A stretch of DNA of 64,000 nt, from contig CDMY01000347.1 in NCBI GenBank assembly GCA_001179505.1, positions 186,001-250,000 of the forward strand, read 5' to 3'. Under the pieces are notes generated by a model. It saw nothing but the letters and a program-made list of their open reading frames with translations. It had not been told where the DNA came from and ran no database searches. A program made the position numbers and the translations under genes. Origin of the DNA: Vitrella brassicaformis CCMP3155 (lineage: Eukaryota > Protista > Chromerida). How positions within the stretch are numbered: position 1 is the first letter of the stretch; the number at the start of each line of letters is the position of its first letter. Positions 22,140-55,800 of the stretch are shown piece after piece.

Positions 22140-23557
22140 ATGGCGGCTGCTCAGAAGGACGGCAAGTCAGGCAACGCGACTTTCCTCATCAATTTCCTTG
22201 CTGGCGGTGTGAGCGGCGGCGTGAGCAAGACCGTGGTGGCGCCTTTGGAGAGGGTCAAGCTGCTGCTGCAAGTGCAGGTGAACCAGATCTGTTCATCACG
22301 GTCACACAAGCAGGCAGATCCATGTGTTATCACTTTTGTGTGTTGTGTGTTGTGGGTGTGGGTGTGGGTGTGTTGCGTAGGATGCGTCGACTCAGATCGG
22401 CGATGGCGGGACGAAGAAGTACAAGGGCTTCGTGGACTGCTTTGTGCGGGTCTACCACGAGCAGGGCGTCGTCTCATACTGGAGGGGTAAGTGAGTGGGG
22501 GACCCACCACACACAGCCCCCAACGTCAACACAATCACAAGCCCGGACAGCCATGTATCCCCTCTTTGGCGCTGTTTGTGTGCGTGTGTGTGTGTGCGTG
22601 TGTGTGTGTGCGTGTGTGTGTGTGTGTGTGCAGGCAACTGGGCGAATGTGCTGCGTTACTTCCCCACTCAGGCGTTGAACTTCGCCTTCAAGGAGAAGTA
22701 CCAGAAGTTCTTTGTGCGGCACGATCCCAAGACAGACTTCTGGAAATTCTTCATGGGCAACCTCGCATCAGGCGGGGCCGCAGGTCAGTCACTCAGGCAG
22801 ACAGAAACAAACACAAGTGTCGTGTGTATGTGTGTCATTTTATGGCTGCAGGTGCGACATCCCTGTTGTTTGTGTACCCGCTGGACTTCGCACGGACGCG
22901 GCTGGGTGCCGATGTGGGCAAGGCGGCGCAGGAGAGGCACTTCACGGGCCTCGTCGACTGCTGCGGCAAGATATTCAAACAGGCACACAATCACACTGAC
23001 CACACCACACAGAGCAAAGGAGAGAGTCACTCTTGCAAACACTCATGCCCTGTTGCCTCTTGTCTGTCTTTATGCAGGACGGCGTGAGAGGTCTGTACTA
23101 CGGGTTTGGCGTGTCCGTGGCGGGTATCATCGTGTATCGCGCCGCCTTCTTCGGCCTCTACGACACCGCCAAGGCCATGCTCTACCGCGACCCCAAGAAG
23201 AGCAACCCACTCGTCTCATTCACACTCGGCCTGGCCGTCGAGACCGCCGCGGGCGTCGTCGCATACCCCTTCGACACGGTCAGGCGGCGGCTGATGATGC
23301 AGGCCGGGAGGGCCGATGTGCTGTACTCGTCGACCATGGACTGCGCCAGGAGGATACTCGTAAGAGAGAGAGAGAGAGGGACAAACCAAGATGCCAAGAT
23401 GCCTACCTGACTGTGTGTGTGTGTGTGTGTTTGTGTTCAGACGGAGGAGGGCGCTGCAGCGTTCTTCAAGGGCTGCTGGTCCAACGTGATGCGTGGGGTC
23501 GGCGGGGCGATCGTCCTTGTCCTTTACGACGAGATCAAGAAGGCCATACCAGCATGA
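22140..23557 (+). CDS. AAC: Mitochondrial ADP/ATP carrier (adenine nucleotide translocase)
   Basis: [59 protein letters not shown] and [13 protein letters not shown]. Stop TGA at 23555-23557. Confidence 0.96.
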
Positions 23558-24167
23558 CACCCCTCTGTTGTTCTCTTTCTCTTCTCTGTTCTCTCTTCTG
23601 ACTCCTCCCTCCTCTTGAGCACGATCCCGCCTCATGACCTCTTCCCTCTGAATGAATGAGTGATGCTGTAGAGATGTACAGCTGCTAGGCCAGACTGCAT
23701 TCATTGCATGGATGGATGAGTCCGTACGATCCCGCATTGCCGACCGGCAGTTTTGACTGACTGACTGATTGGCCTCGACGCGGTGACAGGAAGGGCTGGC
23801 TGCCGATCAGGGCGCTGTGCTATGTTTTCCGCTAGGCGTCATAAGGCGCCGAGCCTCACTGACAGTTTGTTCCATGTATTTTTGACACACACAGCCAGCC
23901 AGCCAGCCGGCCAGCCGACACGCTGAAGATGCGTGGAGCACTTGCATGTTTTCAAGACGAGGCCAAGGTATCAATGGGCCATATGTGGATGGGTGTGTGT
24001 GTCGAGCGTTGTGATTTTTGACTTCCTCCTATTCGTGTGTTGCCTTGGTTTCGTAGACTTCTGCAAGCGACGCACTGACGTCCTCGCCCAGACATCATTG
24101 TTGCTGTCAGTTGGCGTTAACGGCAAATTTACGACTCCGGTACAACACACTTGCGTATCCTTCGAAT

Positions 24168-25586
24168 ATGGCCTCCCTGCGCCTCGTCTTTCTTGCTGCT
24201 GTGTGCCTCGCCCTCCTCGCAGTCCCCGCGCAGAGTGGCTGCGACCCCGAAAAGCCGGACGACTGTAAAAGGATCATCGCGGGCGACCCCCCGGTAGACG
24301 ATGACCTGGATGAGGAGAATGGCAATGTCGTCGCAGAAAATGAAGTCCGGGGCAGCAGTAAGAATCACTGTTTGTGAAGTCACGCGCTGACTTTGATGGA
24401 GTGATCGAATTCATCTGCTGTTTGCGGTGCTTCAGAGATCGTTGCGGGCGTCCCTAATTTCAATGGTGGGACGGGGGACATCGTCGCGGCGAATTCTTTG
24501 TTTGTTGAGGGGCAAGCCGTGGTCGATGGCAACATTGTCGGCACCCGCATTCGTGGCACCGAACTCCGCGGCACCGAAATCAAGGGCACCAGAAGTAAGC
24601 AACAATACCGTATAATGACATGCTGCCTGTTGCGTCGATCTGACTGCAGAGATTACTGTGGGATTTCCGGGGACCTCTGACCAGTTCAACACGGGGCCGG
24701 GATTTCAGGGCAACTTGTATGTTGAAAATGACGCGGTTATCGAGGGCAACATCCGGGGCCCCCGCATCATCAATGCAGGAGTACGCATCACGTGTAATCA
24801 GCCGAGCTGCACGGTGTCGGGTGACAACATCTTGGCGCGAGACGGGGGTAAGCGAGTCACACAGATTACGTGTGCCGGTACACTGCTTCCTGCATAACAC
24901 TTCTGTCTGCATATGTGTCTCTAGGCGTAATTGCTTCAAGAAATGGACAAAGACCTAACGAGTGGACTTTGCACGATGGCGACGTGCAAGCAGCACTTAA
25001 TGTTGAGGCGGATCGCCACGTGTTGGCGGGTGGTCGTGTTCGTGCACGCGATGGTGTCTTCGGACAAAATGGCGTCTTCCTCGGTCGGTCGGTGGCAGGC
25101 GCGTTCGAGGTGTTAGACAGCGATGGCAGCAAGCAAAGGCCGGCGTCCATGGCCGAATGGGCAGATAACAATCGGTCAGTGGCATATGAGGCCTTCAGGC
25201 AGCTTCGTGTGCGGACCGATGGCGACACTCGCCTCTCTCTGGCCGCCGGTGAAGTGAAGAAGATCTTCCCGTCGGCAGTGAAGACGTTCGCAGTCCCCGT
25301 GCATGATGACGGGGCCGATGATGAGCAGGAGGCAGAGGAGATGACCATCGACCTGACACAACTGCTCTACACACAATTTGCCGTCACTCAGGACATTATC
25401 AACGAGAAGGAAGCGACGGCCAAAACCAATGAAGGGATGGCCAAGACGATTGCTGATATGAACGACACGATTGAGGAATTGAAGAAGGCTAATGAAGCCA
25501 TATTGGGTCGCATCGCGCGTCTGGAGCAGTCTGCAGGTCCTATTGAAGCGCTGCACAAGGTGGCCCAAGGTCTGATGGCACCGTAG
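24168..25586 (+). CDS. Secreted protein with tail-fibre-like beta-strand repeats and a C-terminal intramolecular chaperone (peptidase S74/ICA-like) domain plus coiled coil; 4 exons (24168-24357, 24436-24594, 24650-24847, 24925-25586)
   Basis: Signal peptide MASLRLVFLAAVCLALLAVPAQS. Three phase-1 GT-AG introns all restore the frame. C-terminal SD...AYEAFRQLRV...LAAGEVKKIFPSAV...TIDLTQLL...IEELKKANEAILGRIARLE. Confidence 0.7.
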
Positions 25587-26102
25587 CTCTAGCTGCTGAG
25601 CTGAGTGAGTGAGTATGCCTGTCTGTCTGTCTGTCTCTGTCTGTGTGTGGGCTGTACTTTACATTTCAAGAAGAGAGCTGCGATGTAAGAGCTGTTTGCG
25701 TCACAGCTCTTGTCTGCCTGTGTGCAGCTCTTATGTCGGTTTTTGAATGCAATAATTCTACTGTGTGTCTCTGTCTTCGTGTGTGGTGACTTTATCCTTA
25801 TCCCCTATGTGCGTGTTGGTTTGTGTGTGTCCGGGTGTGTGTGTCGAGCGGTGTGTGTTGTGACCTGTTCTATGCCATTGTGATTTTTGACCTCGCTCTT
25901 TTCGTTTGTCATTTGCACCGCTCCCTGCAGTGGCTGTGGGTGAGCTTTGAGTGCCGAGAGCAAGACGCTTCAGACGAAAACACTGATCGATTGATGCGTG
26001 GGATTGATGGACGAAAGAACACGAATCACATGCAAGTTCGCGTCGAGACGGGGGCCTCGTGGGGGCCAAGTTGAAACGGCCAGTTGCGCCTCGAAAGGAA
26101 CA

Positions 26103-47300: not shown

Positions 47301-50300
47301 AGCCCATCCAGGGCTTCACGCCCCAGACACTTCAGCTGCAGCTGCACCCGTCGGACCCCAGCGTGGCGCTCTCCAAGCAGCACCGCAGCGGCCTGTTGCT
47401 CAAGCACTTCAGGGAGCTGCCCACAGACGAGGGCAAAAACGGCTGGACCAATCCCGTCCGGTTCGCCGTGACAGTGACGCTGCCCGACGGTCTGCCCGAG
47501 CAGAGCTTCGAGTTGAGCATCCCCAAGGAGCGCATGCGCGACCTGGCGGGCAATGTCAACGAGCAGGATGTCGTCTACCACGTGGAATACGACAGGACAC
47601 CACCCGAGATGACGCTATCCAAGACATCCCCCGACACCCTCGTTCTCGACAGCCCTTTCAGCGTCACACTCACCGCGTCTGAGAGCGTCCGCACGCTCGA
47701 GGCGACGGCGCTGCGAGTCGATGGGGGGCGTGTGTCGCGACTGACGCCGCAGGGCCACAATGCGTTTGTGGCTGAGGTCATTCCTGAGACGGTGGGTGAG
47801 ATCCGTGTGGAGGTGCCATCAGACGAGGTGGAAGACTTCGCTGGCAATGCCAATGAGGAGAAGGCCGCGCTCCTGCTCAACTATGGTGAGACCCACACAC
47901 ACCCCCACCCACAAGACTAAACAGCAAACAGCACACCCCCTCTCGTGTTGACGTGATTGCTTGCAGTGCCGAAGCAGCCGTGGGGCATCACCCTCCCCCC
48001 GTCGCTCTTCAACGACGCCACGTCCCCATCTTTGGCCGCCCACCTGACCACTCTACGGCAGGGCGGCATCGCCAAGATGCGGCTCATGAAGTGGCCCCCA
48101 CACGAGGCGCTCACCCTGCTGCAGACGGTGTTCGGCGACGAGGCAGAGGTGGTCGTGACGGTGCCCAATCACGCCATCTCCACCTATGCGGCTGATTTCA
48201 CTGCCTCGCGGGAGCTGCTGAACGGGCTGGCGCCATTCGAGAGGATCATTCGCTACGTCGTGGGTAGGCAACATGAATTCTCCTTGTATACGCGACGCGC
48301 ATGGTGGGTCCATGCTCGCTTGCTGTGATGTGTTTTGCGTGCAGTTGGCAATGCGCCCGACCAGGAGAGCGCGGAGAAGGAGTCGAATCCGCCACTGCTC
48401 GCTTCCCTGCTGCAGGCACTCATGAACCTGCTCAAAGTGAGTGGATGGGATGCACTGCACTGGCTGCAGAGAAGGAAGAGACGCTCACACTTTCATTCTT
48501 TCGTCTGCCTCCAGGCGGCCGACGAGACCCTCTCCCCTCTCCAACAGCGGATCACCGTCTCGTGGAGCTCCGATGCCTTCACACATACCTTCCCACCATC
48601 AACAGCTCGCCTCGCCGGCACCACAGAGGACGGCCATTTCCCGGAGGATTCGCAGGACGTCCTGTACCAGACACTGAAGCTGCTGCGCAGCCAGGGCAGG
48701 GGCCTGCCCTTCCTCTTCTCGCTCAACCCCTATAGGATGTGGCTCGACGGGCGTGACAGCCGAAAGCTGCCCATCGCGTACGCTGTTGGGGCGTCAAAGC
48801 CAATGGTCAAGGACTCCTCCACCAACGAGTCATACGCCTGGGTGGGGGAGGCGAGGCTACTGGCGGCCAGGACAGCTATGGACCGAGCAGGCTTCGACGG
48901 CATTCCTCTGGCGGTGAGTGACATCTACTGGCCCGCCAAGAGCGAAGACGGCGCGAGCACAGCGCTGGTAAAGGCGCTCTTCGAGAGCCTGATGTCGATC
49001 ACGTCGGCCAACAGGACGGTGGAGGCCTGGTGGGGCAGCGGCGATCACGACGCGCCATCGGGGACCCTCGTCAAGAAGGACGGCCACTTCGTGTGGGAGG
49101 GCACCCTGCCCGAGTGCTACCAGCTGCAGCACAAGGTTACGGGCAAGACCAAGGCCAGCCCCGCGCTCAGCCACGAGAGCTCCGCCTTCGCCGACAGCGC
49201 ACTCGCGTGCGCCCAGCAGTGCCGCGAGGTGACGTCCTGCGGGTCGTGGGTGTACCGCTACAAGGCCAACCAGTGCACCACCTTCACGGCCCCGCCCGTT
49301 GGCTCGCTGCGGCGAGAGGGTCTGCTCGAGGTGGGCGGCCTCACATACGTCATGGTCAACGACGAGCCAGTCGTGTCGGGCTCGCGCGTCTGCGAGGAGG
49401 CAAAGGGCGGTAAGCGTACAGGCAGGCAGGATTGCGTGTTCTCTCTGATTCTTTTGTGCTCTCTCCGTCCAGATATGTCCTCCCCCTCGGCACCGTCGCG
49501 AGTGTCCCGCAGCCCCAAGGTGCCCTCGACCGACGAGGGCCCCCTGCTCGACCCACCCAACGTGCCGCAGCAGGTGGCCAACAGCAGCGTTAATGAGACG
49601 GCCCAACACATCCCCACGCCGCCCGTGGTGCCCCTCGAGCGGCTCCTGGCGGTGCGGCTGCTGCTCGACTACGATGAGGTGCTGAAGACGGAGGCGTCTC
49701 GCGCTGACCTGCTGGAGGGGCTGAGGACAGCCGTGGCGGACTCGCTGTGGATTGCCAAGAACGACTGCACCATCAAGGGACTCATCCGGGGGTCCGTCGT
49801 TGTGCTGCTCAGCGTGGCTGCACCGAATGAGTTCAAGGATCAGTCCTCCCTAGAAAAGGCATGGTTTGAGATCCTCACAGGTACGCCTCTCCTCCTCATC
49901 TTTCCCACACACACACGGTCAATACAATCCTCTGCATCCGCCCTCTCCTTCTGCTGCTGGGCTGGGCTGTGGTTGGCTGTGGTGGCTTGCAGATCCGCTC
50001 TCCCCGCTGCGTCAGGCGTTCCCCATCGACCCCTACTTCCCCTCCTTCGTCGAGGTGCCCACCCTCAACTCCCCTCAGGGCATCTTCGACGAGTCATGGG
50101 AGGACATCCGCTCCTCAATCCAGCCCAACACACCCCTGCCCGTCAACAACAATTTTATCGGCCAGGCCATCGGGCGGCACTTCCCACCAGCCACATACAA
50201 TCGCCCGCCGGCAGCCAACCACAACGAGACGCACAGCGGGCCACGGGCAGAGGAGGGCAGGAGTGAAAAGGGCGGCTCGCACCTAGCGAGAAGCGGCTCG

Positions 50301-52817: not shown

Positions 52818-55800
52818 TCAGGCATGATGATGATGATGGTGATGACCATGACAATGATGACAATGATGACGACTCTCCTCCTCAGGCACTTCCATCTGAA
52901 ACACAGAGGGCAGCGGCTTGCCTTCGTCGACCGCCTTGCAGACGGGGAAGTCGGATCGCTTGGCGGGGTCGCTGGGCGGGTCGCGGCCCAGGAAGGCTCG
53001 GTCTTTGAAGAGCTCCTCGTCTGGTGTGCCGGGCGCCACGCACCACCGCCGCATAGTCAGGGGCTGTCCGTCAGGCAACGTCATCTTGGCCCTGGGGGAG
53101 TGAGAATGGAGCCATGAGAAGGACAGAAAGAGACGTGTGTGGTGCGGTGTGGTGTGGTGTCTCTGCAGATACATACTTGATTTTGTCGAGGAACTCATCG
53201 AGGCAGCACTCGGCCTTGCCCCCGCAGACGGGCATCTCGCGGCCGTTGTAGATGATCTTGACGAAGTGCTGGGCCTCTGGCCATCCACACACAGACACGC
53301 ACACGTAGAGACACACGCACTTACAGAGTGCACTGTTCTGCCTTGTTTGTTCCCTGCTCTGCAGACTTACTTCCGTTGACGCGTTTCTCCCAGAGCTCCC
53401 AGAAGATCGACGAGGCGAAGGGCGGCTGCTCGTCGTCAAACACGTCCATCGTGCCTAACCCCCACACACGCAGGAAGGTCATTGTGCCGTCACGTGTGTG
53501 TCGGGTGGCGATCTGTGACCCCTTACTGAGTGCAGCCGCGATTGTGCTGTCGTGAGCACTCATCAAAAGGAACTTCAGCGTCACGAACCTCATGTCGCTC
53601 ATGCCGGGGTACTGCAGGCCACGCAATGCAATCCACAGAACCAAACAGCTTTGGCGCACACAGATGGTTCAACACAACACGCAGACCGACAGACCTTCTT
53701 GATGATCTTGGATGCCTCTCTGAGTGACTGTCGGTCGCCCTTCGCCTTTGCCTTGATCGCAGTGACGAGGACGTCGTAAAAGGCCGACGTGGCCACGCGG
53801 GCGTAGAACTCGTCGTCCCAGATCTGTTTCATTCATGTGTCTGTTTCTCCTTTGCCTCGTGTGTGTGTCTCTGTCTGTCTGTCTGTCTGGTGTGCACTGC
53901 TGACGAATGAGAATTTGTGGTCGAGAGCGCGTTGGACGAAGTGGATGTCGCGGGGGTCCTGCAGAATCACATGGCGGCCGTCGGCGATCTGACACGTCAC
54001 GGCGTCGCCCATCTGGGCACACAAACTGACCACAGGACACCGCAGCCATGTCGCCCGCCGGGCATGTCTGTGTGTCTGTGTGTCTGTGCTGCGTACTCGT
54101 AGACGCTTTCGGTGAAGCACCAGTTGGGGTCAGGGGAGCCAGGGGGGGTTCTTGGCCAGAATGCTCTGGCATTCCTTGTCGTACTTATCCTGCACGTCAT
54201 GCCAAGTCTGCAGACACACAGACACACACACACACACACACACAGACACAGACATTCACAGGTGTTGGTCGATGGGATGGCTCGTACTGACCAGGTCGCG
54301 GAGTGCCTCGGGCCTCTTCTTGGCGCGTTTGATTTTGCCGGCGAGCATATCGAGGTAGAACTGGCGTGAGGGGCTGGGATACTCCTGGTCCTCGCCGTGT
54401 TTGGCCTTCCAAAGCTCCTCGTAGTGGCCACACGCCGCGGGCTCCTGGCCCAGAATCAGCGGGTCGTTGTGCTTGTCGGCCGTGAACACTGCAGACAGAG
54501 TTCGCACAATCTGGTCCGTGGCTCTCTTGGATGTGCTGCAGCGCGGTGAAAGCATACCAGGCACGATTTGCCAGTCCCCTGGGAGCGGTCGTTTGTTGAG
54601 GTAGGTGAAGGGCCGGAGGTCGATGTTGTTCTTGGCGGCGTAGCGATGCAAGTAGTCGCGCGTCTCGAACTCTCTAACAGGAGAGGGAGGCATCAGAAGA
54701 AGATAGCCCATATGTTCTTCTTTACTCGTTGGTACCTGACGCCTCCCCAGCCGAATTTGTCGGACATGTCTCTTCGGTCGGGCTCGCCCGGACCCTCGTT
54801 GTAGGTGTCCCGACGCATGGCGGCTTGGCCAGCAGAGAACTGCTCACCTGCACACATAGGCGCAAGCAGCCCGAGTGTGTGTGTGGATGCTGGTCGGCTT
54901 GTCCGTTACATACATACCTGACTCAGGGGGGTAGAGTCCGGCCATTTGTGCCATGGCCGACATGACAGTGCGCCATATGGCTGAAGAACGGATGCAGACC
55001 TCCTCCTGCAAACAGTGCTAGAGCGGGAGGTCGGCTTGCTTCTGTGTGTGTGTGTGTGCGTGTGTGCAGAAAGACTTCAAGGAGAACGAAAAGGATGGAT
55101 GGTGGGGAGGACGCAGCGGCCTGACCAGCATCGGCCAACTGCAGGCACGACATGCACCCCACGACACATCCAGACAGAGAGGGTCTAGTCTCAGAGATTG
55201 CATGTGCTGCTCTGTACGTTCAGCAATACCTCCTCGGGAGCATCATTCGCAAGAAGTACATCGAGAACGTCAAGCCACCCCTCCTTTCGCCGAGCTTCAA
55301 ACCGGTGCGTTGCGCGCAGTCAGAACATCGGGACGTGCAGACACACGGATGTCTGTCTCCACAGACGGGGGCAGCGGCGCAGCACTCTCTGCGTCTGTCT
55401 CATCTCACGTACGGTGAAGTAGCGGTACGGTGCCCGTGCGCCGTGACGGCACATCTCCACCACAAAGACCAGCCTGTCACTCAATCCTGCAAGAGCGAAA
55501 GACGAGACGCACAAACGGCACGAGTTCTGCAATGAATGCAGTGCCAAGCGGCCCGCTGAGGTTTGCCCGAGCCCACCGGTGCGAGCATGCAGGAACGAAG
55601 TCGCTGTGGCGTTTCCGAGCTCCTCCTCCTCGGACTCTGGCACGGAATCATCCTCAACATCAGGTGGCGCCCCAGAGGGGCTGTGGCGGATGTTGTGATA
55701 TGTGCCGTTGTTCTCGATCAGGGTGTCCTGGAGGGAATCGTCTATGAAGTCATCGATGCCGAACTGACTCACATCACCACCACCAGAGGGCACTGCGGGC

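What the first reader, a model, noticed from the sequence alone, without database searches (positions are those of the whole stretch)
24168..25586. Secreted eukaryotic protein built like a phage tail fibre with a self-cleaving chaperone (S74/ICA) domain
Seen: a signal peptide, then Gly/Val/Asn beta-strand repeats (GNVVAENE; GDIVAANSLFVEGQAVVDGNIVG; GNLYVENDAVIEGNIRG; VLAGGRVRARDG). After these come SD...AYEAFRQLRV...RLSLAAGEVKKIFPSAV...MTIDLTQLL...VTQDI and a coiled coil ending RIARLE. Established: phage tailspike/fibre C-terminal ICA (peptidase S74) domains and the MYRF ICA domain follow the order SD.R.K, L..L.pv, G.iAqev..v.P..V, vdy..l, then a trimeric coiled coil, and they self-cleave via a Ser-Lys dyad after trimerisation. 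Inference: this is a domesticated, intron-containing, ER-targeted trimeric beta-fibre (adhesin, extrusome or wall fibre). The Lys lies at Ser+4 (SDGSK) rather than the usual +5, so cleavage competence is uncertain.
Basis: partly seen in the sequence, partly recalled or inferred. Interest (0 to 1): 0.87.

Follow-up and report, generated by a model that had tools for sequence, protein, structure and literature searches.

The report
Algal secreted fibre with phage-type cap
A coral-associated alga (Vitrella brassicaformis) expresses a four-exon gene for a secreted, repeat-built protein whose tail end is a distant relative of the trimerising "chaperone" domain of phage tail fibres and animal MYRF. 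The family to which it belongs has lost the lysine that this domain needs to cut itself off.

Summary
Exons 24168-24357, 24436-24594, 24650-24847 and 24925-25586 (+) give a 402-aa protein, and all three GT..AG splice joints appear in transcript contigs. The protein has a signal peptide, a Cys pair, three beta-strand modules (one per phase-1 exon), a conserved ~110-aa domain, a ~60-residue helix and a conserved ...GLMAP end.

The window is Vitrella brassicaformis CCMP3155. The public model CEM04085.1 (391 aa, "uncharacterized") uses a wrong first exon and so lacks the signal peptide.

The ICA/Peptidase_S74 reading of the C-terminal domain holds as remote homology:
- Pfam and PDB sequence profiles miss it.
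- A phage tail-fibre PHROG hits 15 of 19 family members (best E 9e-8).
- hhalign against genuine ICA domains gives P 0.008.
- Fold searches in PDB, Swiss-Prot, BFVD and the ESM Atlas put ICA domains first.
- Protein-language-model features put it among PF13884 clusters.

Self-cleavage is doubtful. The Lys at Ser+5 is present in all 89 genuine domains checked but absent from every paralog. Only this copy has a Lys there (SDGSK, +4).

The family of about 16 proteins was found only in Vitrella and a metagenomic relative, always among ordinary host genes. UniProt already auto-labels six paralogs "Peptidase S74". This scan had noted S74-type proteins elsewhere in this genome. I rate it a new variant of a known kind.

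The parts
24168..24357 (+). Exon 1. Signal peptide (aa 1-23, nt 24168-24236), Cys pair CDPEKPDDC (aa 25-33, nt 24240-24266), acidic linker and the first GNVVAENE strand motif.
   Evidence: Translation. X6 transcript contig is unbroken over 24159-24357. Paralogs have homologous N-termini.
24358..24435 (+). Intron 1 (78 nt, GT..AG, phase 1).
   Evidence: Joint 24357>24436 is present in transcript contigs of X1 and X6.
24436..24594 (+). Exon 2 = beta-module 1 (aa 64-116: KIVAGVPNFNGGTGDIVAANSLFVEG...IRGTELRGTEIKGTR).
   Evidence: Internal repeat with exon 3: local score 79 against a shuffle null of 31+-6. Module-per-exon layout is shared with the paralog genes.
24595..24649 (+). Intron 2 (55 nt, GT..AG, phase 1).
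   Evidence: Joint 24594>24650 is present in X1 and X6. It is partly retained in one X2 contig.
24650..24847 (+). Exon 3 = beta-module 2 (aa 117-183: KITVGFPGTSDQFNTGPGFQGNLYVENDAVIEGNIRG...).
   Evidence: P0001 (JGI transcript-derived, 283 aa) is 100% identical across exons 3+4.
24848..24924 (+). Intron 3 (77 nt, GT..AG, phase 1).
   Evidence: Joint is present in X1, X2 and X6.
24925..25085 (+). Exon 4, first part = beta-module 3 (aa 184-236: VIASRNGQRPNEWTLHDGDVQAALNVEADRHVLAGGRVRARDG...).
   Evidence: AF2 predicts strands here with pLDDT 56-77.
25083..25409 (+). ICA/Peptidase_S74-like domain (aa 236-344): VAGAFEV, SDGSK, SMAEW, AYEAFRQLRVRT, RLSLAAGEVKKIFPSAVKTF, acidic loop, EMTIDLTQLLYTQFAVTQDII.
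   Evidence: phrog_1980 tail fibre: E 0.011 for this protein, down to 9e-8 in paralogs. hhalign P 0.0077. Foldseek and VIA-align top hits are 7dc3, 3gw6 and 3gud. BFVD, Atlas and Swiss-Prot searches agree. pLM features agree.
25119..25133 (+). SDGSK (aa 248-252): candidate remnant of the catalytic SDxRxK motif, with Lys at +4. It lies in the least conserved segment of the domain.
   Evidence: hhalign aligns this SD and K with the ICA Ser and Lys columns at low confidence. No paralog has a Lys here. The segment differs between orthologs P0002 and P0003.
25356..25532 (+). Long C-terminal helix / coiled coil (aa 327-385, ending ...GRIARLEQS).
   Evidence: AF2 predicts one ~60-residue helix, with pLDDT 84-96 in its centre. 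In MyRF ICA the C-terminal triple coiled coil drives trimerisation (PMC8326128).
25536..25586 (+). Conserved C-terminal tail GPIEALHKVAQGLMAP (aa 387-402) plus the stop codon. Its role is unknown.
   Evidence...GPIEALQK..EGLMAP is conserved at the very end of most paralogs and repeated in P0008.
23947..23968 (+). Not part of the gene: the first exon (MFSRRGQ) used by the public model CEM04085.1, spliced to 24223.
   Evidence: P0128 sequence. No such joint is seen in any run, and contigs run unbroken through 23968 and through 24222/3.

Best explanation
This is a nuclear gene of Vitrella brassicaformis. It encodes a 402-aa protein of a lineage-restricted family: about 16 related proteins, at least 13 of them annotated Vitrella genes.

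Proposed course of events:
1. The protein enters the ER through a cleavable signal peptide.
2. Its body consists of three ~55-65-aa beta-strand modules, (I/V)xAGxP...GD(I/V)xA...(V)xGN(I/V). Each module is encoded by one phase-1-bounded exon, so fibre length has evolved by exon duplication.
3. The last exon adds a divergent ICA (Peptidase_S74-type) domain followed by a ~60-residue helix.
4. By analogy with endoNF, T5 pb1 and MYRF, this C-terminal unit most likely nucleates a parallel homotrimer through the coiled coil and templates folding of the beta body upstream.

Unlike those proteins, the family lacks the catalytic Lys and its "catalytic" segment is poorly conserved. The domain therefore probably stays attached as a permanent trimerisation foot rather than cutting itself off. 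The conserved extreme C-terminus (...GLMAP) fits a retained, functional tail.

The mature product would be an extracellular or secretory-organelle fibre (wall, surface or adhesive component).

Shown: gene structure, expression, the family, the exon-module layout, the host genomic context, remote ICA homology and fold, and absence of the Lys in paralogs.
Inferred: trimerisation, the chaperone role, non-cleavage, the location and the biological role.
For: - Gene model and transcription.
- Species and public model.
- Family.
- ICA homology, sequence level: phrog_1980 "tail fiber protein" matches 15 of 19 members. E values are 9.3e-8 (P0011), 3.8e-5 (P0004), 4.5e-5 (P0002) and 0.011 (this protein), at profile positions 340-444 of 449. 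The same PHROG matches genuine PF13884 domains at positions 317-381.
- ICA homology, profile-profile: hhalign of the family against 23 genuine ICA domains gives P 0.0077. A local run scored 20.1 against a column-shuffle null of 12.3+-2.4, reached by 2 of 150 shuffles.
- Fold, PDB: Foldseek top 3 are the MyRF ICA domain 7dc3, prob 0.75-0.89.
- Fold, Swiss-Prot AFDB: 8 of the top 9 are the ICA regions of MYRF, MYRFL or MrfA; the ninth is an uncharacterized Dictyostelium membrane protein.
- Fold, BFVD: every named hit among the top 50 is an ICA, S74, tail-fibre or other virion/surface protein (about half carry no name), prob 0.6-1.0.
- Fold, ESM Atlas by shape: 9 of 10 rows are PF13884, TM 0.43-0.59, rmsd 3.1-4.0 A.
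- Fold, unbiased VIA-align over 48,161 chains: ranks 1-2 are 7dc3_A and 3gw6_A.
- pLM features: the best hits, and 100 of the 100 counted with them, are PF13884 clusters; score 0.93, 178 shared features.
- UniRef names six paralogs "Peptidase S74 domain-containing protein".
- Secondary-structure order alpha-beta-beta-alpha-beta-beta-long alpha.
- Lys loss: against Lys at +5 in 89 of 89 genuine domains. K592A abolishes MyRF cleavage (PMC8326128).
- The catalytic segment is the least conserved part between orthologs.
- Exon = module.
- Host context.
Against: - The Pfam PF13884 model gives no hit at E<=10 for this protein or five paralogs.
- HMMER profiles of the family find no ICA chain in the PDB.
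- HMMER finds no phage or bacterial protein among 1.84 billion representatives.
- All fold-search E-values are weak (2.5e-3 to 1).
- The AF2 models are of low confidence (mean pLDDT 64-67; the putative cleavage segment is below 50).
- VIA-align Z of about 6 does not stand above the long-helix background.
- The residue register of the catalytic segment is ambiguous. hhalign puts the Ser at S248. PHROG coordinates and the fold ranges put it about 7-10 residues downstream.
- This copy does carry Ser...Lys at +4, so residual cleavage cannot be excluded.
- Trimerisation and location are untested.
- The beta body has no firm relative.
Confidence: 0.55

Rival explanations
1. This is a fully functional self-cleaving ICA. 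After trimerisation, Ser248 attacks the preceding peptide bond with Lys252 as the base. The ~155-aa C-terminal chaperone is released and a mature beta-fibre is left behind.
For: hhalign places S248-D249 on the catalytic Ser-Asp columns and K252 on the invariant Lys column, with a one-residue deletion. Paralog P0008 keeps SDRLAD, close to the canonical SDxRLK. The domain lies at the C-terminus after a beta-rich body, as in cleaving fibres.
Against: The spacing is +4, whereas 89 of 89 genuine domains have +5. Lys is absent from all other family members. The segment is poorly conserved even between orthologs. The alignment confidence in these columns is minimal, and another register fits equally well. 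The conserved extreme C-terminal tail argues for a retained C-terminus.
Confidence: 0.2
2. The gene is an endogenous viral fibre gene, from a polinton-like virus, virophage or giant virus, sitting in an integrated element rather than a host gene with a host function.
For: Peptidase_S74-tipped fibre proteins are reported as ubiquitous in polinton-like viruses integrated in protist genomes (PMC12220804). Giant-virus proteins are among the BFVD fold hits: Edafosvirus, Bodo saltans virus and Clandestinovirus.
Against: The gene has three spliceosomal introns that are confirmed as spliced. A eukaryotic signal peptide is present. The neighbours within +-10 kb of this gene and of three relatives are ordinary cellular genes (mitochondrial carrier, GAS, TMP-TENI/HK, sugar transporter, WD40, diphthamide synthase), with no capsid, packaging ATPase, integrase or polymerase. 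No relative was found in 2.9 million viral contigs or 50,697 phage records. A viral origin in the distant past is not excluded.
Confidence: 0.05
3. The C-terminal domain is not related to ICA at all. It would be a lineage-specific alpha/beta domain plus coiled coil whose motif order and fold resemble ICA by chance or convergence.
For: There is no Pfam or PDB HMMER hit. Fold-search E-values are all above 1e-3. The models are of low confidence. The catalytic dyad is absent.
Against: Independent methods converge on the same family out of very large libraries. A phage tail-fibre HMM reaches E 9e-8 on a paralog, in the profile region that genuine S74 domains also match. hhalign gives P 0.008, with conserved AR..G..A..V and AW motifs in register. 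An established member, MyRF ICA, is itself seen by a phage ICA profile only at E 0.042.
Confidence: 0.07
4. The protein is a bactofilin-like, polymer-forming cytoskeletal beta-helix protein, following the UniRef name given to paralog P0004.
For: UniRef names P0004 "Polymer-forming cytoskeletal". There is a weak Foldseek hit to bactofilin 6rib_A (E 5.2). One Atlas cluster with 28% Bactofilin members scores 0.81.
Against: The Pfam Bactofilin model gives no hit on P0004 or any member at E<=10. The signal peptide and paired cysteines point to the secretory pathway, not the cytosol. The scores are at noise level.
Confidence: 0.03

Closest known systems
Phage tail-spike and tail-fibre C-terminal intramolecular chaperone domains (Peptidase_S74, PF13884; endoNF CIMCD 3GW6, GA-1 gp12 3GUD, T5 pb1 4UW8)
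   Same: The domain lies at the C-terminus after a beta-rich repeat body. The order of elements is the same: helix (AYEAFRQL), two strands, helix (AAGEVKKIFP), two strands, then a long helix ending RIxRLE. The AR..G..A..V core motif is shared. Fold searches and a tail-fibre PHROG match it.
   Different: There is no Pfam hit. The invariant Lys at Ser+5 is missing (it is at +4 here and absent in all paralogs). The loops are shorter. An acidic insert precedes the last strand. A much longer coiled coil and a conserved GLMAP tail follow. The gene is a eukaryotic nuclear gene with introns and a signal peptide.
MYRF / MYRFL / Dictyostelium MrfA ICA domain (7DC3; PF13884 + PF13887)
   Same: This is the best solved-structure match, and the MYRF-family ICA regions are the top Swiss-Prot matches. 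It is a eukaryotic protein made at the ER. Its C-terminal triple coiled coil drives trimerisation (PMC8326128).
   Different: MYRF is a type-II membrane transcription factor with an NDT80 DNA-binding domain and a transmembrane helix, and it needs S587/K592 to release its N-terminus. The Vitrella protein has neither a DNA-binding domain nor a transmembrane helix, is lumenal or secreted, and lacks the dyad.
S74-tipped fibre proteins of polinton-like viruses and giant viruses of protists (PMC12220804)
   Same: These are fibre-like modular proteins with a C-terminal S74 domain found inside protist genomes. They are a plausible ancestral source.
   Different: Those genes lie in viral elements, are usually very large, and match PF13884 directly. 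This family lies among host genes, is intron-bearing, small (about 190-500 aa), and too divergent for Pfam.
Bacterial surface proteins with a C-terminal S74 domain (YadA_head+S74, Por_Secre_tail+S74)
   Same: These are secreted trimeric or repeat beta adhesins capped by an S74 fold. They are among the nearest Atlas structural clusters.
   Different: They are prokaryotic, match PF13884 directly, and have different repeat types.

Membership tests
Peptidase_S74 / ICA domain (PF13884, PROSITE ICA) | Match to the curated family profile | tested here: not met
   No PF13884 hit at E<=10 for the four exon products or for P0001-P0006. As indirect support only, UniRef labels six paralogs "Peptidase S74 domain-containing", and phrog_1980 (tail fibre, which also matches genuine S74 domains) hits 15 of 19 members, best E 9e-8.
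Peptidase_S74 / ICA domain (PF13884, PROSITE ICA) | ICA fold: alpha/beta core followed by a long C-terminal helix | tested here: met
   ICA domains are the top hits in PDB, Swiss-Prot AFDB, BFVD and the ESM Atlas, and in an unbiased VIA-align search. The scores are weak (TM 0.34-0.59, Z about 6, E >= 2.5e-3) and come from a low-confidence monomer model.
Peptidase_S74 / ICA domain (PF13884, PROSITE ICA) | Catalytic Ser-Lys dyad with Lys at Ser+5 | tested here: not met
   The window copy has SDGSK (+4). No Lys occurs between FE(V/I) and AEW in any paralog. Lys is at +5 in 89 of 89 genuine domains. The dyad is indispensable in MyRF and endoNF (PMC8326128).
Peptidase_S74 / ICA domain (PF13884, PROSITE ICA) | C-terminal position after a beta-helical or fibrous domain | tested here: met
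   The domain occupies aa 236-344 of 402, after three beta-strand modules.
Peptidase_S74 / ICA domain (PF13884, PROSITE ICA) | Homotrimerisation and trimer-dependent autocleavage | not testable with these tools
   No multimer prediction or experiment was available. Only a confident ~60-residue helix is predicted.
MYRF family | NDT80/PhoG DNA-binding domain upstream of the ICA, and a transmembrane helix downstream | tested here: not met
   There is no NDT80 or MYRF Pfam hit. The C-terminus after the helix is the 16-aa polar tail GPIEALHKVAQGLMAP.
Bactofilin (PF04519) | Match to the bactofilin profile; cytosolic polymer | tested here: not met
   No PF04519 hit on any member at E<=10. A signal peptide is present.
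Endogenous polinton-like or giant virus fibre gene | Location within a viral element that carries capsid, ATPase or integrase genes | tested here: not met
   The flanks within +-10 kb of this gene, P0004, P0002 and P0003 hold only cellular genes. No relatives were found in viral contigs or phage records.

The most novel reading that the evidence does not exclude
A chromerid alga captured a phage, PLV or bacterial ICA trimerisation module long ago and fused it to an exon-shuffled beta-module cassette. It then expanded the product into a host-encoded family of secreted trimeric fibres in which the protease function was discarded. The domain would now serve as a permanent trimer foot, with the conserved GLMAP tail as an anchoring or sorting signal. 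This would be the first eukaryotic structural (non-MYRF, non-viral) use of the ICA fold. The fibres might build the laminated sporangial wall or a surface coat.
Probability: 0.3. Interest if true: 0.7.

Novelty: new variant of a known kind. Interest (0 to 1): 0.55.

Why it matters
Outside viruses, the only eukaryotic ICA-domain proteins that have been studied are the MYRF transcription factors, where the domain acts as a trimerisation-gated protease.

A secreted, intron-bearing, host-encoded fibre family that keeps the fold but drops the catalytic lysine would show a second, purely structural way in which eukaryotes have used this phage-type module.

It would also give a natural test of which ICA functions (trimer nucleation or cleavage) can be separated.

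It gives candidates for unknown wall or surface components of chromerids, the photosynthetic relatives of apicomplexan parasites.

In practical terms, the public gene model for this locus is wrong at its 5' end and hides the signal peptide, and the protein is labelled "uncharacterized".

Tried and rejected
- Pfam scan of the four exon products and six family proteins: no S74, bactofilin, NDT80 or ice-binding family, only coiled-coil noise.
- phmmer and hmmsearch of the domain against PDB sequences: nothing relevant.
- Family profile against 1.84 billion representatives: 20 hits. Eighteen are the same family. The other two (P0015, P0018) match only a short motif in many repeated stretches; P0018, which I read, is a tandem-repeat ORF. 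None was named as bacterial or viral.
- Family profile against IMG/VR viral contigs: no relative.
- tblastn of the domain against 50,697 phage genomes at E<=10: no match.
- First local hhalign against K1F-like ICA domains with default settings: E 0.12, only 40 columns. It improved with a more global setting and with the tool's own run.
- Atlas feature search of the beta-repeat body: best score 0.83 and mixed families, so not usable.
- Whole-model Foldseek for the beta body: ice-binding and left-handed beta-helix hits at E>0.2, not accepted.
- Residue-level placement of the catalytic Ser from fold-search ranges: unreliable, because that segment has pLDDT below 50.
- Literature searches for Vitrella with S74 or ICA and for the UniProt and GenBank accessions: nothing.
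- Findings look-up by sequence: blank.
- Plastid targeting was considered and rejected: the region after the signal peptide is acidic and Cys-paired, not transit-peptide-like.
- Contamination was rejected: the introns are spliced, and the gene sits on a 475-kb scaffold of eukaryotic genes.
Full report
**1. What is in the sequence**

Reading 23800-26000 and joining the three GTAAG donors to the matching acceptors gives four exons: 24168-24357, 24436-24594, 24650-24847 and 24925-25586. Together they make a 1209-nt open frame of 402 codons. All three introns (78, 55 and 77 nt) are GT..AG and phase 1.

I laid public runs on 23900-25900. All three joints appear in assembled transcript contigs of runs X1 and X6; the third joint also appears in X2. 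One X6 contig runs unbroken from 24159 across the ATG at 24168. A genomic contig (X3) covers the locus without differences. The four-exon model and its expression are therefore confirmed.

**2. Whose gene it is**

A protein search with the last-exon ORF found a 100% identical JGI fragment (P0001, exons 3+4) and paralogs of 44-50% identity in Vitrella brassicaformis CCMP3155.

The cluster look-up gave the public model of this very gene, CEM04085.1 / A0A0G4EY79 (P0128, 391 aa, "uncharacterized"), on a 475-kb scaffold. It is identical to my model except at the N-terminus. It starts at an upstream ATG (23947, MFSRRGQ) and splices into 24223, which removes the signal peptide.

No run shows that joint, and transcript contigs run straight through both of its ends. 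The paralogs also begin with homologous signal peptides.

**3. Anatomy** (numbering)

- aa 1-23: signal peptide (MASLR, hydrophobic core, PAQS|G).
- aa 25-33: a conserved Cys pair.
- aa 64-116, 117-183 and 184-236: three beta-strand modules, (I/V)xAGxP...GD(I/V)xA...GN(I/V).
- aa 236-344: a strongly conserved domain.
- aa 327-385: a helix of about 60 residues.
- aa 387-402: the tail GPIEALHKVAQGLMAP.

Modules 1 and 2 are clear duplicates (local score 79 against a shuffle null of 31+-6). Each module starts exactly at a phase-1 intron. The genes of paralogs P0004 and P0002 show the same "one module per phase-1 exon" layout. The body has therefore grown by exon duplication, which is a eukaryotic signature.

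**4. The family**

A profile of the conserved domain, searched against 1.84 billion representative proteins, found only 20 proteins. Two of them (P0015, P0018) match only a short motif in many repeated stretches; P0018, which I read, is a tandem-repeat ORF. The other eighteen share the same architecture.

Those with a source name are all from Vitrella. One ENA metagenome contig carries a syntenic ortholog of P0002 at 78% identity.

No Chromera, other alveolate, bacterial or viral protein reached E 1e-3. Nothing was found in IMG/VR or in 50,697 phage genomes.

**5. Is the C-terminal domain an ICA / Peptidase_S74 domain?**

Against:
- Pfam gives no PF13884 hit at E<=10 for this protein or five paralogs.
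- HMMER against PDB sequences finds no ICA chain.

For:
- (a) PHROGs. phrog_1980 "tail fiber protein" matches 15 of 19 family members at its C-terminal end (profile 340-444 of 449), with E 9.3e-8 (P0011), 3.8e-5 (P0004), 4.5e-5 (P0002) and 0.011 (this protein). Four other tail-fibre PHROGs hit several members. The same phrog_1980 is hit by genuine PF13884 domains at profile 317-381.
- (b) Profile-profile comparison. I took the annotated endoNF chaperone domain of phage K1F and collected 106 PF13884-bearing relatives. hhalign of the family against 23 of their domains gives P 0.0077 for this single planned comparison. AEW aligns with DAW, and DARLGLAAxEV aligns with ARxHFGVIAQQV. My local run scored 20.1 against 12.3+-2.4 for column-shuffled queries, reached by 2 of 150.
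- (c) Fold. AF2 models are weak (pLDDT 64-67), but their secondary structure follows the ICA order.
  - Foldseek against the PDB ranks the three chains of the MyRF ICA crystal structure first (prob 0.75-0.89), with a large gap to the next hit.
  - In Swiss-Prot AFDB, 8 of the top 9 are the ICA regions of MYRF, MYRFL or MrfA; the ninth is an uncharacterized Dictyostelium membrane protein.
  - In BFVD, every named hit among the top 50 is an ICA, S74, tail-fibre or other virion/surface protein (about half carry no name; prob 0.6-1.0, best E 2.5e-3).
  - In the ESM Atlas by shape, 9 of 10 rows are PF13884 clusters (TM 0.43-0.59, rmsd 3.1-4.0 A).
  - A Foldseek-independent VIA-align pass over 48,161 chains puts 7dc3_A (Z 6.0) and endoNF 3gw6_A (Z 5.8) at ranks 1-2. 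These Z values do not rise above the long-helix background.
- (d) Protein-language-model features. The best hits, and 100 of the 100 counted with them, are PF13884 clusters (score 0.93, 178 of 256 shared features).
- (e) UniRef already names six paralogs "Peptidase S74 domain-containing protein".
- (f) As a yardstick, the established MyRF ICA is seen by my phage ICA profile only at E 0.042. Divergence of this size is therefore normal for eukaryotic members.

I conclude that the domain is a remote homolog with the ICA fold (about 0.85). It does not pass the curated Pfam test.

**6. Is it a protease?**

In MyRF, S587A and K592A abolish cleavage. These residues correspond to S911 and K916 of endoNF (PMC8326128). 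Li et al. report the two residues as absolutely conserved (PMC3742443).

All 89 genuine domains I collected carry Lys five residues after the nucleophile position. Eighty-four match S[DN]xxxK. The other five keep the same Lys in a variant (Cys for Ser, or SE for SD) or cut-off motif.

In the Vitrella family an [ST][DE] pair usually survives, and P0008 reads SDRLAD, close to SDxRLK. No paralog, however, has any Lys between the conserved FE(V/I) and AEW motifs.

Only the window's copy has a Lys there, in SDGSK with spacing +4. hhalign places this SD and K on the catalytic columns with a one-residue deletion, but at minimal confidence. The PHROG coordinates and fold-search ranges instead suggest a register about 7-10 residues downstream, where there is no Ser-Lys pair at all.

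This segment is also the least conserved part between the orthologs P0002 and P0003, whereas the rest of the domain is almost identical. It has pLDDT below 50 in the models.

Canonical self-cleavage is therefore unlikely for the family and unproven for this copy (about 0.2). The conserved extreme C-terminal tail also fits a C-terminus that is kept.

**7. Origin and context**

Within +-10 kb of this gene and of three relatives there are only ordinary cellular genes, and no capsid, packaging ATPase, integrase or polymerase.

S74-tipped fibres are reported as ubiquitous in polinton-like viruses integrated in protist genomes (PMC12220804). Giant-virus proteins are among the fold hits. A viral or bacterial source in the past is therefore plausible. 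No donor can be named, and the present genes are host genes.

**8. Most likely mechanism**

Steps 1 to 4 below are inferred:
1. The protein is translocated into the ER and its signal peptide is removed.
2. The C-terminal coiled coil and ICA-like core bring three chains together.
3. They template the beta modules upstream.
4. The domain stays attached.

The product would be a short secreted trimeric fibre for the wall, the surface or a secretory organelle. The beta body itself matched nothing firmly: ice-binding, LbH and bactofilin hits are at noise level, and Pfam does not confirm the "polymer-forming cytoskeletal" name that UniRef gives P0004.

**9. Novelty**

No paper mentions these proteins. 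UniProt's automatic label on paralogs means the domain call is not wholly new. This scan had already noted S74-type secreted proteins on other pieces of the same genome (s1-231051, s1-197166, s1-212024). I did not test those notes.

New here:
- the corrected gene model with its signal peptide;
- the exon-module architecture;
- the family-wide loss of the catalytic Lys;
- the non-viral genomic context.

I class it as a new variant of a known kind, of moderate interest.

**Limits**

The full 402-aa product has no single reference, so searches used P0001, P0128 and the exon pieces.

Noticed in passing
window 23947-24223: The public gene model CEM04085.1 (P0128) starts at ATG 23947 (MFSRRGQ) and splices from 23968 to 24223, which deletes the signal peptide. 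Transcript contigs do not show this joint and support ATG 24168.
   Followed up: yes
window 22300-24140: The upstream + strand gene is a mitochondrial carrier (ADP/ATP translocase-like; Mito_carr in the public annotation). Its highly covered transcript contigs end at 24113-24140, only about 20-45 nt before the first transcript base seen for the fibre gene (24159). The intergenic spacer is therefore very short.
   Followed up: partly
window 24595-24649: One RNA contig of run X2 starts inside intron 2 (24616) and continues into exon 3. This suggests some retention of intron 2, or pre-mRNA.
   Followed up: no
window 25601-25654 and 23870-23920, 25830-25860: (CTGT)n, (GT)n and (CAGC)n microsatellites lie in the UTRs and spacers around the gene. 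The reads tool skipped 25601-25654 as a repeat.
   Followed up: no
P0129 (Vitrella CEL94505.1, 1154 aa): A family member (P0009, a 188-aa MMETSP transcript) clusters at 90% identity with a 1154-aa public protein named tubulin-tyrosine ligase-like 9. The public annotation has probably fused a fibre-family gene to its TTLL9 neighbour.
   Followed up: no
P0008 (Vitrella CEM27653.1, 499 aa): This paralog repeats the coiled-coil + RxxRLE + ...GLMAP unit three times and keeps SDRLAD, the closest remnant of the canonical SDxRLK motif. The GLMAP end behaves like a module of its own, with unknown function.
   Followed up: partly
most paralogs, just upstream of the ICA-like domain: A CxCG cysteine pair precedes RRAVAGAFEV in most paralogs but is missing in the window's copy, which has GQNGVFLG instead. 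The window's copy has two cysteines in module 2 (ITCNQPSCTV) instead.
   Followed up: no
P0018 (498 aa) and P0015 (2465 aa), hits of the family profile: P0018 is a tandem-repeat ORF containing PTPIAEWSN, and its score is inflated by repetition. P0015, whose sequence I did not read, likewise matched only a short motif in 8 stretches. Both are probably not relatives.
   Followed up: partly
window 47970-49060 and 55041-55365: Other first-stage notes exist on this window (a GH17-like fold without catalytic glutamates in a giant adhesin; inverted exons of acid phosphatase A). I did not examine them.
   Followed up: no
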